DNA from: Octopus sinensis | Taxonomy: Eukaryota | DNA length: 64,000 nucleotides | Direction of reading: 5' to 3' | Assembly (NCBI RefSeq): GCF_006345805.1 | Contig: NC_043006.1 | Coordinates: 47,678,001 to 47,742,000 of the forward strand | Part shown: positions 42,563 through 46,425 of the stretch, one piece after another | How the letters are laid out: each line of letters opens with the position of its first letter | Numbering within the stretch: position 1 is the first letter of the stretch | Notes under the pieces: model-generated | Databases searched by the model: none | What the model was told of the DNA's origin: nothing | What the model saw: only the letters and a program-made list of their open reading frames with translations | Program-made: the position numbers and the translations under genes

Positions 42563-43369
42563 CCTCTCTCTCTCCCTCTCTCTCTCTCTCTCCCTCTCTC
42601 TCTCTCTCTCTCCCTCTCTTAACGTTTTATTGATTATACAATCGTATTGAACACAGCCAGGCATCAATAATTACTGATCCGTTGGTAGAATTTTTAAAAA
42701 GTCATCTTTTATTTTTGCTGCATAATCTCAATATACACGGAGACTAAAGCCAATATACTCTTACACCTTTCACACCCACCATATTGTTTTACAGTGTCTC
42801 CAAGCGAATAAGAAATACATTTTGTATCTTAGATCAAGCTAAATTTAATATAATACATTCGTATAATGCATTAAAGTTAAACATATTAAGGACAAAATCC
42901 TTTACTATCCAAAACAGCATGGATTTATTGCCAAAATGAGTATTTCAGTCAATATTAAAAATAGTATGTGCTAGAAATAAAAACGAAAGTACTAAGTATA
43001 ATAGTTATCTGTGGAATGCATTTTAACTAAAGTAGTGCTTCGGCAAAAGATTAACTTACTCTGACATTTTGACCATTGCATTTAGAGAATTAGGCGTTAA
43101 TCCTTTCTTTAATCCATGTTACAGGAGTTTTTGTTTTAAACTTAGACCAGGTAGCGAAATAGTGCACTTTACGAGGGTACATTGGCGCGGAATTCTCCTT
43201 AATAGTCGCCCCTCACGCACTTGGTATATATATATATATATATATATATTAACAATAAGGAACGGCCATAATAGGCCATTCACCCACTAGAAATAACAGC
43301 CAAAGCTTCTACCGCAAATAAAGATTAATTCCGAAACAGGAGGAAAATTAAAAAAACATTTACCCTGTA

Positions 43370-43476
43370 ATTTCTTGTACGGTATACCGTTTCATCCGCT
43401 GTTTAATGGTAAACTAACCTGATTAAATTAAATCAAGCCAATCTTCCATAAGCCCTCGGATTCTTCAGCAAGAAAT
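43370..43476 (-). ncRNA. Type I hammerhead ribozyme, array copy 1
   Basis: AUUUCUUG-CUGAAGA-AUCCG-(58 nt)-CGGAU-GAAA-CGGUAUACCG-UA/CAAGAAAU; predicted cut between 43378 and 43377. Confidence 0.88.
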
Positions 43477-43853
43477 AGCTCAAGTCGGGACAGATATTTA
43501 CAACGAGGCATACCCAATCTTGCCAAGGCAATATCTGACCTAAAATTTCAAATCGTCGCACTCGCGCCAAATTTATCGGCAGCAAATAAATATCAGCCGT
43601 CGATTCCATTACGGAATTAACCAAAAAATTCATAATTAATCAATATAGGGTGGCAAGGAAAATTTTGTAGAATTTTATTGCCACCAGCGGCCCAGTAGGA
43701 AAAAATAAATAGTCATAGACCATTTTTAAGTTCACATTACAATTAAGGAACGGCCATAATAGGCCATTCACCACTAGAAATACAGCCAAAGCTTCTACCG
43801 CAAATAAAGATTAATTCGTAAACAGGAGAAAATTAAAAAAACATTACCCTGTA

Positions 43854-43959
43854 ATTTCTTGTACGGTATACCGTTTCATCGGCGTTTAATGGTAAACTAA
43901 CCTGATTAAATTAAATCAAGCCAATCTTCCATAAGCCCTCGGATTCTTCAGCAAGAAAT
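43854..43959 (-). ncRNA. Type I hammerhead ribozyme, array copy 2 (one stem II mismatch)
   Basis: Same core; the 3' strand of stem II reads CCGAU instead of CGGAU. Predicted cut between 43862 and 43861. Confidence 0.78.
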
Positions 43960-44341
43960 AGCTCAAGTCGGGACAGATATTTACAACGAGGCATACCCAA
44001 TCTTGCCAAGGCAATATCTGACCTAAAATTTTCAAATCGTCGCACTCGCGCCAAATTTATCGGCAGCAAATAAATATCAGCCGTCGATTCCATTACGGAA
44101 TTAACCAAAAAATTCATAATTAATCATATAGGGTGGCAAGGAAAATTGTAGAATTTTATTGCCACCAGCGGCCCAGTAGGAAAAAATTAAATAGTCATAG
44201 ACCATTTTTAAGTTCAACATTAACAATTAAGGAACGGCCATAATAGGCCATTCACCCACTAGAAATAACAGCCAAAGCTTCTACCGCAAATAAAGATTAA
44301 TTCCGTAAACAGGAGAAAATTAAAAAAACATTTACCCTGTA

Positions 44342-44448
44342 ATTTCTTGTACGGTATACCGTTTCATCCGCTGTTTAATGGTAAACTAACCTGATTAAAT
44401 TAAATCAAGCCAATCTTCCATAAGCCCTCGGATTCTTCAGCAAGAAAT
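44342..44448 (-). ncRNA. Type I hammerhead ribozyme, array copy 3
   Basis: Intact consensus; predicted cut between 44350 and 44349. Confidence 0.88.
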
Positions 44449-44832
44449 AGCTCAAGTCGGGACAGATTTTACAACGAGGCATACCCAATCTTGCCAAGGC
44501 AATATCTGACCTAAAATTTTCAAATCGTCGCACTCGCGCCAAATTTATCGGCAGCAAATAAATATCAGCCGTCGATTCCATTACGGAATTAACCAAAAAA
44601 TTCATAATTAATCAATATAGGGTGGCAAGGAAAATTTTGTAGAATTTTATTGCCACCAGCGGCCCAGTAGGAAAAAATTAAATAGTCATAGACCATTTTT
44701 AAGTTCAACACTAACAATTAAGGAACGGCCATAATAGGCCATTCACCCACTAGAAATAACAGCCAAAGCTTCTACCGCAAATAAAGATTAATTCCGTAAA
44801 CAGGAGAAATTTTAAAAAACATTTACCCTGTA

Positions 44833-44939
44833 ATTTCTTGTACGGTATACCGTTTCATCCGCTGTTTAATGGTAAACTAACCTGATTAAATTAAATCAAG
44901 CCAATCTTCCATAAGCCCTCGGATTCTTCAGCAAGAAAT
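44833..44939 (-). ncRNA. Type I hammerhead ribozyme, array copy 4
   Basis: Intact consensus; predicted cut between 44841 and 44840. Confidence 0.88.
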
Positions 44940-45575
44940 AGCTCAAGTCGGGACAGATATTTACAACGAGGCATACCCAATCTTGCCAAGGCAATATCTG
45001 ACCTAAAATTTTCAAATCGTCGCACTCGCGCCAAATTTATCGGCAGCAAATAAATATCAGCCGTCGATTCCATTACGGAATTAACCAAAAAATTCATAAT
45101 CATCATATAGGGTGGCAAGGAAAATTTTGTAGAATTTTATTGCCACCAGCGGCCAGTAGGAAAAAATTAAATAGTCATAGACCATTTTTAAGTTCAACAT
45201 TAACAATTAAGGAACGGCCATAATAGGCCATTCACCCACTAGAAATAACAGCCAAAGCTTCTACCGCAAATAAAGATTAATTCCGTAAACAGGAGAAAAT
45301 TAAAAAAACATTTACCCTGTAATTAAAAATGGTCTATGACTATTTAATTTTTCCTACTGGGCCGCTGGTGGCAATAAAATTCTACAAAATTTTCCTTGCC
45401 ACCCTATATTGATTAATTATGAATTTTTTGGTTAATTCCGTAATGGAATCGACGGCTGATATTTATTTGCTGCCGATAAATTTGGCGCGAGTGCGACGAT
45501 TTGAAAATTTTAGGTCAGATATTGCCTGGCAAGATTGGGTATGCCTCGTTGTAAATATCTGTCCCGACTTGAGCT

Positions 45576-45685
45576 ATTTCTTGCTGAAGAATCCGAGGGC
45601 TTATGGAAGATTGGCTTGATTTAATTTAATCAGGTTAGTTTACCATTAAATAGCGATGATTGAAACGGTATACCGTACAAGAAAT
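45576..45685 (+). ncRNA. Type I hammerhead ribozyme, array copy 5 (stem II base disrupted)
   Basis: Core, stem I and stem III are intact, but tagcgatgatt replaces cagcggat before GAAA. Predicted site between 45677 and 45678. Confidence 0.7.
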
Positions 45686-46070
45686 TACAGGGTAAATGTT
45701 TTTTTAATTTTCTCCTGTTTACGGAATTAATCTTTATTTGCGGTAGAAGCTTTGGCTGTTATTTCTAGTGGGTGAATGGCCTATTATGGCCGTTCCTTAA
45801 TTGTTAATGTTGAACTTAAAAATGGTCTATGACTATTTAATTTTTTCCTACTGGGCCGGTGGTGGCAATAAAATTCTACAAAATTTTCCTTGCCACCCTA
45901 TATTGATTAATTATGAATTTTTTGGTTAATTCCGTAATGGAATCGACGGCTGATATTTATTTGATGCCGATAAATTTGGCGCGAGTGCGACGATTTGAAA
46001 ATTTTAGGTCAGATATTGCCTTGGCAAGATTGGGTATGCCTCGTTGTAAATATCTGTCCCGACTTGAGCT

Positions 46071-46177
46071 ATTTCTTGCTGAAGAATCCGAGGGCTTATG
46101 GAAGATTGGCTTGATTTAATTTAATCAGGTTAGTTTACCATTAAACAGCGGATGAAACGGTATACCGTACAAGAAAT
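46071..46177 (+). ncRNA. Type I hammerhead ribozyme, array copy 6
   Basis: atttcttg ctgaaga atccg...cggat gaaa cggtataccg ta caagaaat is read directly on the plus strand; predicted cut between 46169 and 46170. Confidence 0.88.
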
Positions 46178-46425
46178 TACAGGGTAAATGTTTTTTTAAT
46201 TTTCTCCTGTTTACGGAATTAATCTTTATTTGCGGTAGAAGCTTTGGCTGTTATTTCTAGTGGGTGAATGGCCTATTATGGCCGTTCCTTAATTGTTAAT
46301 GTTGAACTTAAAAATGGTCTATGACTATTTAATTTTTTCCTACTGGGCCGCTGGTGGCAATAAAATCTACAAAATTTTCGTTGCCACCCTATATTGATTA
46401 AATATATATATATATTATATATATA

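What the first reader, a model, noticed from the sequence alone, without database searches (positions are those of the whole stretch)
43249..46400. Candidate octopus retrozyme: a ~490-bp tandem repeat in which every unit carries a type I hammerhead ribozyme
Seen: six copies of a motif with a perfect 8-bp stem I (AUUUCUUG/CAAGAAAU), the exact core CUGAAGA...GAAA, a 5-bp stem II base (AUCCG/CGGAU) closing a 58-nt structured insert, a 12-nt perfect palindrome ACGGUAUACCGU as stem III, and a GUA cleavage triplet. They are spaced 484-492 bp apart, and the array sits in (TA)n. Established: tandem repeats with one type I hammerhead per unit and a palindromic stem III (cleaving as dimers) define non-LTR retrozymes and ribozyme satellites, such as newt satellite 2, Schistosoma Sm-alpha, Dolichopoda pDo500 and the coral, mussel and axolotl retrozymes. 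Several of these are processed to monomeric linear and circular RNAs and are thought to be mobilised by Penelope-like elements. Inference: this is a cephalopod retrozyme producing ~490-nt self-cleaved and probably circular RNA. The long stem II insert and the A-U pair at 10.1-11.1 are atypical. I cannot confirm whether the family has been reported before.
Basis: partly seen in the sequence, partly recalled or inferred. Interest (0 to 1): 0.95.

Follow-up and report, generated by a model that had tools for sequence, protein, structure and literature searches.

The report
Hammerhead-ribozyme retrozyme repeat in (TA)n
A ~492-bp non-coding repeat carrying a self-cleaving hammerhead ribozyme motif sits inside a (TA)n microsatellite as two head-to-head arrays; it is a new example of the known animal "retrozyme" elements, and its junctions look like a footprint of reverse-transcription-based insertion.

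Summary
The motif is real and not a chance match. A structural descriptor finds four complete type I hammerheads in the 64 kb, all inside the array, and none in 200 shuffles. The isolated 107-nt motif folds by itself into the canonical three-way junction. Rfam Hammerhead_1 aligns the whole model but scores only 21.4 bits against a threshold of 34, largely because of the 58-nt helix II insert.

- Only 4 of the 6 copies are intact. Two have a broken helix II.
- The array is not one tandem run. It has 4.3 units on the minus strand joined 5'-to-5' to 2.2 units on the plus strand.
- Helix III is a stable 4-bp hairpin, so cleavage as a dimer is optional.

Both outer (RNA 3') ends abut (TA)n just after a TTAA. 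The inverted block starts 7-9 nt upstream of where the direct block stops, and it ends 5-7 nt from the predicted cut site. This is a twin-priming geometry. It suggests one retrotransposition event from a multimeric or circular ribozyme-processed RNA.

My verdict is a non-LTR retrozyme, a new member of a known kind. Expression, circularity, the partner reverse transcriptase and the cephalopod origin could not be tested.

The parts
43225..43249 (.). Left (TA)12.5 microsatellite. It abuts the RNA-3' end of block 1, which ends ...TTGTTAA|(TA)n at unit position ~131.
   Evidence: TRF; sequence
43248..45324 (-). Block 1: 4.3 repeat units with the ribozyme sense on the minus strand. It runs from unit position 6 (window 45324) through four unit boundaries to unit position 131 (window 43248).
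   Evidence: TRF period 491, 97% matches; BLAST of the unit against the window; alignment
43370..43476 (-). Intact 107-nt type I hammerhead. Predicted cut between 43378 and 43377.
   Evidence: (RF00163, 21.4 bits)
43854..43959 (-). Damaged hammerhead. The helix II 3' strand reads CGCCGAU instead of CAGCGGAU. Core, helix I and helix III are intact.
   Evidence: no RF00163 match
44342..44448 (-). Intact 107-nt type I hammerhead. Predicted cut between 44350 and 44349.
44833..44939 (-). Intact 107-nt type I hammerhead. Predicted cut between 44841 and 44840.
45323..45324 (.). Head-to-head (RNA 5'-to-5') inversion junction with a 2-nt TT/AA microhomology. It joins block 1 at unit position 6-8 to block 2 at unit position 139-141.
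45323..46401 (+). Block 2: 2.2 repeat units with the ribozyme sense on the plus strand. It runs from unit position 139 to unit position ~233 and ends ...TTGATTAA|(AT)n.
   Evidence: TRF period 492
45576..45685 (+). Damaged hammerhead. CAGCGGAUGAAA is replaced by UAGCGAUGAUUGAAA, so the helix II base is lost.
   Evidence: no RF00163 match
46071..46177 (+). Intact 107-nt type I hammerhead. Predicted cut between 46169 and 46170.
46402..46483 (.). Right (TA)n microsatellite of about 42 copies with interruptions. It abuts the RNA-3' end of block 2.
   Evidence: TRF; sequence

Best explanation
This locus is a non-LTR retrozyme. It is a non-coding ~492-bp repeat in which each unit encodes a type I hammerhead ribozyme, and it was inserted into a (TA)n microsatellite by target-primed reverse transcription.

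Proposed life cycle (inferred from the family):
1. The array is transcribed as an oligomer.
2. Each hammerhead cuts after GUA. Helix I is 8 bp, helix II is a 5-bp base plus a 58-nt structured extension, and helix III is 4 bp with a UAUA loop.
3. [quoted passage not shown] A host tRNA ligase of the RtcB type can circularise them.
4. A reverse transcriptase supplied in trans copies multimeric or circular RNA into tandem cDNA.

Proposed origin of this copy (inferred from its junctions): a single twin-primed event.
1. One nicked (TA)n end primed at unit position ~233 and copied 2.2 units. This made the direct block.
2. The other (TA)n end primed at unit position ~131 and copied 4.3 units, up to an RNA 5' end at or near the hammerhead cut. 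This made the inverted block.
3. The priming site of the second cDNA lies 7-9 nt upstream of where the first cDNA stops.
4. The two cDNAs were joined through a 2-nt microhomology.

The reverse transcriptase donor is most likely a Penelope-like element. A microsatellite-targeting LINE is the alternative.

Shown: the motif, the repeat anatomy and the junction coordinates. Inferred: cleavage, circularisation, the priming model and the partner element.
For: Motif:
- All core nucleotides and all three helices are present in 4 identical copies.
- The descriptor scan gives 4 hits in the window and 0 in 200 shuffles.
- The unconstrained minimum-free-energy fold of the 107-nt motif is exactly the hammerhead junction, at -35.3 kcal/mol. 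Pair probabilities are 0.58-1.0 in all three helices.
- RF00163 aligns end to end over model positions 1-45, with E = 0.017-0.09. The only differences at consensus-conserved positions are G10.1-C11.1 changed to A-U, which is compensated, and C17 changed to A, which is an allowed H.

Retrozyme traits:
- The unit is 492 bp, within the 51-972 bp reported. About 6.5 units is typical, since 75% of families have at most 7 (bioRxiv 10.64898/2026.07.22.740005).
- GC content is 36%, against the <45-50% reported (PMC7229834).
- ORFs are at most 75 aa and their frames differ between units. They have no homologues.
- The sense monomer folds at -140.9 kcal/mol with z = -4.65. The antisense folds at -96.5 kcal/mol with z = -3.23.

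Insertion footprint:
- Both outer ends abut (TA)n, which covers only 3.4% of the window.
- Both ends fall right after TTAA.
- The blocks are joined 5'-to-5' with a 2-nt microhomology.
- The inverted block's flank end is at unit 131 and the direct block's inner end is at unit 139-141. Agreement this close has a chance of about 4%.
- The inverted block's inner end is at unit 6-8, which is 5-7 nt from the predicted cut. The chance of this is about 1.6%.
- This geometry matches the twin priming described for L1 (PMC2912911).
- It also matches the tandem/inverted insertions and (TA)n bias of Penelope-like elements (PMC8557442).
Against: - No biochemical or transcript evidence could be obtained.
- Rfam's curated threshold is not reached (21.4 against 34 bits).
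- The 10.1-11.1 pair is A-U rather than the conserved G-C, and helix II is unusually long. The usual loop 1-loop 2 tertiary contact is therefore uncertain, and activity could be low.
- Two of the six copies have a broken helix II. Within the array the hammerhead region is not significantly less variable than the rest: 3 events in 645 nt against 23 in 2532 nt, Fisher p = 0.33.
- Only one locus is visible. There are no other copies in the window, and no relatives in any searchable collection. Mobility and covariation are therefore untested.
- No Penelope-like ORF was seen in the window.
- The twin-priming reading rests on two post-hoc coincidences at a single locus.
- In the full-length monomer's minimum-free-energy fold, helix I is replaced by alternative pairings.
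Confidence: 0.8

Rival explanations
1. It is ordinary satellite DNA that merely retains a relic or weak hammerhead. The array grew and was inverted by DNA-level processes near a fragile (TA)n tract, such as unequal crossing-over, re-insertion of rolling-circle extrachromosomal DNA, or fold-back and template-switch rearrangement. No RNA intermediate or ribozyme function is involved today.
For: - Two of six ribozymes are broken, and the motif is not measurably more conserved than the rest of the unit.
- The 10.1-11.1 pair is atypical and the Rfam score is below threshold.
- Only one locus is seen.
- (TA)n tracts are abundant in the window, with 97 runs.
Against: - Four copies keep all core positions and all 17 helix pairs, which is far beyond chance.
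- The inversion is not a fold-back palindrome. The junction joins unit 6 to unit 139.
- Block 2 carries private variants.
- DNA-level models do not predict that both outer ends lie at TTAA|(TA)n. They also do not predict the 131/139 relation, or an inner end 5-7 nt from the ribozyme cut.
Confidence: 0.12
2. The repeat is real, but the head-to-head arrangement is an assembly artefact, such as a chimeric or mis-joined long read in a repeat. In that case the twin-priming inference is void.
For: - Penelope-type tandem/inverted structures are known to cause assembly problems (PMC8557442).
- Most differences between units are 1-nt indels in homopolymer runs, which looks like long-read consensus noise.
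Against: - The junction is offset by 133 nt of unit phase, so it is not the perfect palindrome that a hairpin read would give.
- Block 2 has its own variants, including a unique ribozyme lesion.
- Both blocks end cleanly in (TA)n followed by unique flanks.
Confidence: 0.1
3. The array is the pseudo-LTR or terminal part of an autonomous Penelope-like element, not an independent non-autonomous element.
For: - Penelope-like elements carry type I hammerheads in their pseudo-LTRs, form tandem/inverted copies and prefer (TA)n (PMC8557442).
- Vertebrate retrozymes are related to pseudo-LTRs.
Against: - No RT/GIY-YIG-like ORF was seen in the array or the window. The array's ORFs are at most 75 aa. Of the 70 window ORFs of at least 90 aa, most are low-complexity, and the 10 non-repetitive ones scanned against Pfam gave no RT or GIY-YIG hit.
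- Hammerheads of Penelope-like elements are described as minimal variants lacking helix III (PMC7761336). This one has a 4-bp helix III and a long helix II.
- There are six consecutive ~492-bp units with no internal body.
Confidence: 0.05

Closest known systems
Mussel (Mytilus galloprovincialis) non-LTR retrozyme (Cervera & de la Peña 2020, PMC7229834)
   Same: - Presumably the same phylum, if the window is molluscan.
- Tandem non-coding repeats of a few hundred bp (350-390 bp) with low GC.
- One type I hammerhead per unit, lacking the archetypal loop 1-loop 2 nucleotides.
- A highly self-paired RNA.
   Different: - The unit here is longer, at 492 bp.
- Helix II carries a 58-nt extension.
- The 10.1-11.1 pair is A-U.
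- No sequence similarity could be tested.
- The mussel circRNAs and its self-cleavage (kobs ~0.1/min) are shown experimentally. Nothing has been shown experimentally here.
Newt satellite 2 / axolotl retrozymes (330-350 bp)
   Same: Tandem repeats with one type I hammerhead per unit, and a palindromic tetraloop capping helix III.
   Different: Amphibian helix III has only 1-2 bp, and efficient cleavage needs a double hammerhead. Here helix III is a 4-bp hairpin with three G-C pairs (-2.9 kcal/mol), so monomer cleavage is plausible. The 12-bp dimer duplex (-18.8 kcal/mol) is possible but not required.
Penelope-like elements (pseudo-LTR hammerheads; insertion architecture)
   Same: Type I hammerhead, tandem plus inverted 5'-truncated copies, and insertion into (TA)n so that target-site duplications are invisible (PMC8557442).
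   Different: There is no RT/endonuclease ORF. The hammerhead is not the minimal form that lacks helix III. No 30-40-bp 'tail' extension was seen.
L1 5'-inverted insertions made by twin priming (PMC2912911)
   Same: - Both RNA-3' ends face the flanks.
- The junction is 5'-to-5' with microhomology.
- The internal priming site lies just upstream of the truncation point of the direct segment, with 7-9 nt missing.
   Different: The template here is a periodic multimer or a circle rather than a unique mRNA with poly(A). Priming occurs at AU-rich UUAA sites on (TA)n ends. The enzyme is unknown.
Plant LTR retrozymes
   Same: Non-autonomous, hammerhead-processed, with a circRNA intermediate proposed.
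   Different: The plant elements have type III hammerheads inside ~350-bp LTRs, PBS and PPT motifs, 4-bp target-site duplications and GC >55%. None of these is present here.

Membership tests
Hammerhead ribozyme, type I (Rfam RF00163) | Conserved core C3 U4 G5 A6 N7 G8 A9 ... G12 A13 A14 A15.1 ... U16.1 H17 | tested here: met
   CUGAAGA ... GAAA ... GUA|C is present in all six copies. The RF00163 alignment covers model positions 1-45.
Hammerhead ribozyme, type I (Rfam RF00163) | Three helices around the core, with helix I open and helices II and III closed | tested here: met
   Helices are 8 bp (I), 5 bp plus extension (II) and 4 bp (III) in 4 of 6 copies. The unconstrained minimum-free-energy fold equals this structure, with pair probabilities 0.58-1.0. 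Helix II is broken in the other 2 copies.
Hammerhead ribozyme, type I (Rfam RF00163) | G10.1-C11.1 pair at the base of helix II | tested here: not met
   The pair is A10.1-U11.1, a compensated double change relative to the Rfam consensus.
Hammerhead ribozyme, type I (Rfam RF00163) | Score at or above Rfam's gathering threshold (34 bits) | tested here: not met
   The score is 21.4 bits, with E = 0.017-0.09 in local searches. Most of the 58-nt helix II extension is scored as insertions.
Hammerhead ribozyme, type I (Rfam RF00163) | Site-specific self-cleavage, and a tertiary contact between helix I and helix II | not testable with these tools
   Internal loops exist in helix II, 5 bp from the core, and beyond the 8-bp helix I.
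Metazoan non-LTR retrozyme | Short tandem DNA repeats (about 50-970 bp) each carrying a type I hammerhead | tested here: met
   The unit is 492 bp and there are 6.5 units, with 4 of 6 ribozymes intact. By the strict definition in bioRxiv 10.64898/2026.07.22.740005, where an 'active' array has a hammerhead in all repeats, this array is not fully active.
Metazoan non-LTR retrozyme | Low GC, non-coding, no LTR/PBS/PPT | tested here: met
   GC content is 36%. ORFs are at most 75 aa, with frames not preserved between units. No homologues were found in any frame. There is no terminal repeat other than the unit itself.
Metazoan non-LTR retrozyme | Highly self-paired sense RNA | tested here: met
   -140.9 kcal/mol with z = -4.65. 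None of 100 shuffles folded as well.
Metazoan non-LTR retrozyme | Expressed as monomeric linear and circular RNAs | not testable with these tools
   No transcriptome data are available. The only indirect hint is one cDNA end 5-7 nt from the predicted cut.
Metazoan non-LTR retrozyme | Dispersed multi-locus family, co-existing with Penelope-like elements in the genome | not testable with these tools
   There is a single locus in the 64 kb. No hits were found in the metagenome or viral collections, and the prokaryote-genome scan gave only 7 chance matches. The source genome is not available.
Autonomous Penelope-like element | ORF with reverse transcriptase plus GIY-YIG endonuclease | tested here: not met
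   No such ORF was seen in the array or among the window ORFs. Most of the 70 ORFs of at least 90 aa are low-complexity, and the 10 non-repetitive ones scanned against Pfam gave no RT or GIY-YIG hit. This was a limited scan, so degraded fragments are not excluded.
Twin-primed retrotransposition product | Two segments joined 5'-to-5', RNA-3' ends at both flanks, the internal priming site adjacent to the truncation point of the direct segment, and junction microhomology | tested here: met
   The unit positions are 131 (flank) / 6-8 | 139-141 / ~233 (flank), with a 2-nt TT overlap. The definition is taken from PMC2912911.
Twin-primed retrotransposition product | Target-site duplication | tested here: inconclusive
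   Both flanks are (TA)n, so any duplication is invisible. The same is reported for Penelope-like elements in microsatellites.

The most novel reading that the evidence does not exclude
The locus is a young, almost unaltered record of how hammerhead retrozymes integrate. The event would be a single twin-primed reverse transcription. Both nicked (TA)n ends anneal at UUAA sites of one multimeric RNA, or of one circular RNA copied by rolling circle. One cDNA runs off at an RNA 5' end created by hammerhead cleavage in vivo.

If the same junction logic recurs genome-wide, it would give direct genomic evidence for three things that are currently only hypothesised for animal retrozymes: the form of the template, in vivo cleavage, and the class of the mobilising enzyme (a microsatellite-targeting Penelope-like element or an R4/Dong-type LINE). 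The ribozyme itself, with its A10.1-U11.1 pair and ~68-nt helix II, would also be a natural active variant outside current descriptors.
Probability: 0.35. Interest if true: 0.6.

Novelty: new member of a known kind. Interest (0 to 1): 0.4.

Why it matters
Hammerhead-bearing tandem repeats (non-LTR retrozymes) are already known from cnidarians, mussels, insects, amphibians and fish. Another lineage-specific family is therefore expected rather than surprising.

Three things give this one modest value:
- No paper in the searchable library reports a hammerhead or retrozyme from a cephalopod, if that origin is confirmed.
- The ribozyme falls below Rfam's threshold because of its 58-nt helix II extension and its A-U 10.1-11.1 pair. 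Standard screens would therefore miss such families.
- The clean junctions give a testable hypothesis on an open question, namely how retrozyme RNA is turned into tandem DNA and which retroelement machinery does it.

Tried and rejected
- **Relatives through ORFs.** The 68-aa unit ORF and a 508-aa concatenate of all six-frame segments gave no homologue. Exact look-ups failed too.
- **Exact-pattern scans of collections.**
  - Metagenome contigs: 0 hits, two patterns.
  - Viral contigs: 0 hits.
  - Prokaryote genome contigs: 7 hits, about the chance expectation. All lack helices I and III and were rejected.
- **Organism identification.** A LINE-tail ORF (39805-40040) gave only two weak, unnamed hits. 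The 'octopus' claim could neither be confirmed nor refuted.
- **Penelope-like ORFs.** The ORF list and Pfam scans of 10 non-repetitive ORFs found none.
- **Within-array selection test.** Underpowered, p = 0.33. With four identical intact copies there is no covariation to measure, so I did not build a covariance model.
- **Literal sequence search in papers.** Only unrelated primer matches.
- **Hairpin-read artefact for the inversion.** Considered and judged unlikely, because the unit phase is offset by 133 nt across the junction and block 2 has private variants.
- **Pol III transcription of multimers.** Considered unlikely, because the sense strand has T-runs of 4-7 at six places per unit.
- **Failed script.** One shuffle script timed out. 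The strand folding z-scores replaced it.

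
Full report
**1. Observation**

Tandem Repeats Finder reports two adjacent arrays. One spans 43248-45324 with period 491, 4.3 copies and 97% matches. 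The other spans 45323-46405 with period 492 and 2.2 copies. (TA)n runs lie at 43225-43249 and 46402-46483.

The two arrays are reverse complements of each other. The palindrome ACGGTATACCGT occurs six times, at 43379, 43863, 44351, 44842, 45665 and 46157. Spacing within blocks is 484, 488, 491 and 492 bp, and 823 bp across the junction.

In RNA sense the motif reads AUUUCUUG-CUGAAGA-AUCCG-[58 nt]-CGGAU-GAAA-CGGUAUACCGU-A|CAAGAAAU. The first A of ACGGUAUACCGU is the last A of GAAA, position 15.1. This sense lies on the minus strand for the first four copies and on the plus strand for the last two.

Four copies are identical and intact: 43476-43370, 44448-44342 and 44939-44833 on the minus strand, and 46071-46177 on the plus strand. 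Two copies carry lesions confined to the 3' strand of helix II, at unit positions 469-475. These are 43959-43854 and 45576-45685.

It needs correcting on 'every unit' and on the simple tandem layout.

**2. Is it more than chance?**

I scanned both strands of the window with a descriptor. It required CUGANGA, helix II of at least 4 bp, GAAA, helix III of at least 3 bp with A15.1-U16.1, H17, and helix I of at least 5 bp. It finds exactly the four intact copies and nothing in 200 shuffled windows.

The isolated 107-nt sequence folds into the canonical three-way junction without any constraint, at -35.3 kcal/mol. Pair probabilities are 0.58-1.0 in all helices.

Rfam Hammerhead_1 (RF00163) aligns the full model over positions 1-45 to each intact copy. 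It scores 21.4 bits against a gathering score of 34, with E = 0.017-0.09. Most of the 58-nt helix II extension is treated as insertions. Conserved consensus positions differ only in two places. One is the 10.1-11.1 pair, where G-C becomes A-U in a compensated change. The other is position 17, where C becomes A, an allowed H. GUA triplets occur in some natural hammerheads (PMC1636495 abstract). The two damaged copies give no hammerhead match.

**3. The unit**

- The consensus is 492 nt, numbered from the predicted cut. GC content is 36% and the sense strand is U/G-rich.
- ORFs in the array are at most 75 aa. The longest frame has a different length and C-terminus from unit to unit, and no frame has a homologue. 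The unit is non-coding.
- The sense monomer folds at -140.9 kcal/mol (z = -4.65). The antisense folds at -96.5 kcal/mol (z = -3.23).
- In the full-length minimum-free-energy fold, helix I is replaced by alternative pairings. The helix II hairpin persists.
- T-runs of 4-7 occur at six places per unit on the sense strand. Pol III would therefore be unlikely to make multimers. This is an inference.
- Units are 97.8-98.8% identical to one another. Most differences are 1-nt indels, many in homopolymer runs. These could be young mutations or long-read consensus noise.
- The hammerhead region is not significantly less variable than the rest of the unit: 3 events in 645 nt against 23 in 2532 nt, Fisher p = 0.33. 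This test has no power at this depth.

**4.

In unit coordinates, block 1 (minus strand) runs from position 6 at window 45324 through four unit boundaries to position 131 at window 43248. Block 2 (plus strand) runs from position 139 at window 45323 to about position 233 at window 46401.

- Both RNA-3' ends face outwards and abut (TA)n immediately after a TTAA. The left end reads TTGTTAA|(TA)n and the right end reads TTGATTAA|(AT)n.
- The two RNA-5' ends meet at 45323/45324 and share a 2-nt TT.
- Perfect (TA)≥6 runs cover 3.4% of the window. Having both ends in (TA)n by chance has a probability of about 0.1%.
- The junction is not a fold-back palindrome. The unit phase differs by 133 nt across it, and block 2 has private variants. 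This argues against a hairpin-read artefact.

The layout matches the twin priming described for L1 (PMC2912911). In that mechanism one target end primes at the RNA 3' region. The other end primes internally on the same RNA, and the two cDNAs are joined through microhomology. Twin priming predicts that the flank-adjacent end of the inverted segment lies just upstream of the truncation point of the direct segment. Here those positions are 131 and 139-141, so only 7-9 nt are missing, which has a chance of about 4%.

The inner end of the inverted block is at unit 6-8, which is 5-7 nt downstream of the predicted hammerhead cut. The chance of this is about 1.6%. That position is what is expected if the cDNA ran off an RNA whose 5' end was made by self-cleavage.

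Two templates fit. One is a linear oligomer of at least 6.45 units with a ribozyme-cut 5' end. The other is a circular monomer copied by rolling circle and then linearised at the ribozyme site. These are post-hoc coincidences at a single locus. I treat them as moderately supportive inference, not proof.

**5. What it is**

All sequence-testable features of metazoan non-LTR retrozymes are met. [quoted passage not shown]

Size and copy number fall within reported ranges. Consensus lengths of 51-972 bp are reported, and 75% of families have at most 7 units (bioRxiv 10.64898/2026.07.22.740005).

The proposed life cycle comes from that literature and was not tested here. It consists of oligomeric transcription, self-cleavage, circularisation by a tRNA ligase, and reverse transcription in trans into tandem cDNA.

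Helix III is a 4-bp hairpin with three G-C pairs and a UAUA loop, at -2.9 kcal/mol. The same 12 nt can form a 12-bp intermolecular duplex at -18.8 kcal/mol. This differs from amphibian motifs, which have 1-2-bp helices and need dimers. Monomeric cleavage is therefore plausible, and the dimer mode is optional.

**6. Which enzyme?**

Penelope-like elements are the favoured partner in the literature. They show tandem copies plus inverted 5'-truncated copies, and a bias for (TA)n that hides target-site duplications (PMC8557442). This locus shows the same features.

Microsatellite-specific non-LTR elements of the restriction-like-endonuclease clades, including R4, are an alternative (PMC4640811). 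If the genome is an octopus, both Dong-R4 and Penelope families are listed among recently active elements in O. vulgaris (PMC13282606).

No Penelope-like ORF was seen in the window. The partner is therefore unresolved.

**7. Comparison and novelty**

The closest known system is the mussel retrozyme. It has 350-390-bp repeats, a hammerhead lacking the archetypal loop nucleotides, slower cleavage and abundant circRNA.

This element differs from it in three ways: a longer unit, a 58-nt helix II extension and an A-U 10.1-11.1 pair.

No paper in the held library links hammerheads or retrozymes with cephalopods, beyond a remark on Naiad remnants. However, the origin of the window could not be verified.

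I classify it as a new member of a known kind and score interest at about 0.4. The motif and the classification are solid. The added value is the insertion footprint and a ribozyme variant that standard screens miss.

**8. Limits**

There are no transcripts, no biochemistry, no second locus and no orthologous copies. Covariation, activity, circularity and mobility therefore remain open. The decisive tests are listed under next steps.

Noticed in passing
window 48515-48633 (-): A full-length eukaryotic 5S rRNA sequence (RF00001, 104 bits) lies 2 kb from the array. No T-run terminator follows it. Instead there is a non-5S tail (TTCCTTTAAAGGCGGTGCTCCAGCACGG...AAAAGAGTAAAAGAGAAAGAGAG). It may therefore be a 5S-derived SINE rather than a 5S gene.
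   Followed up: partly
window 39805-40040 (+): An ORF fragment resembles the C-terminal tail of a LINE ORF2 (…RGRGRPRIRWLGNIKSDTG…DRTDWKTLIQRV) and runs into a (TA)n tract. It had only two weak homologues (57% and 53% identity) and no Pfam hit.
   Followed up: partly
window 950-1198, 5336-5623, 9811-10250, 21000-21458, 24234-24652, 26660-26866, 40601-40859, 41938-42137, 54924-55355: A SINE-like interspersed repeat family of about 200-260 bp, with copies 66-89% identical to one another, occurs in both orientations. Several copies adjoin (TA)n/(TG)n tracts, which accounts for much of the window's microsatellite load.
   Followed up: no
window 17416-17973, 19643-20067, 32203-32442, 47017-47393: A second interspersed repeat family, 85-90% identical, includes internally duplicated ~118-bp segments. 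One copy lies 600 bp to the right of the array.
   Followed up: no
window 1693-2587 and 36912-37884: Long imperfect GAT/GAC-type arrays with sub-periods of 9-12 nt read as poly-Asp, poly-Ile or poly-His ORFs of up to 305 aa. They are probably low-complexity DNA, not genes.
   Followed up: no
window 43248-46405 (array): About half of the differences between units are 1-nt indels, many of them in A/T homopolymer runs. This pattern is as compatible with long-read consensus error as with real mutation. The 'age' of the array and the two ribozyme lesions should be checked against raw reads.
   Followed up: partly
window 48661-48680: A 21-nt stretch just upstream of the 5S-like sequence resembles unit positions 5-25 of the repeat (AAGTTACAGGTAAATGTTTT, 90% identity, E = 0.31). 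This is probably chance.
   Followed up: no
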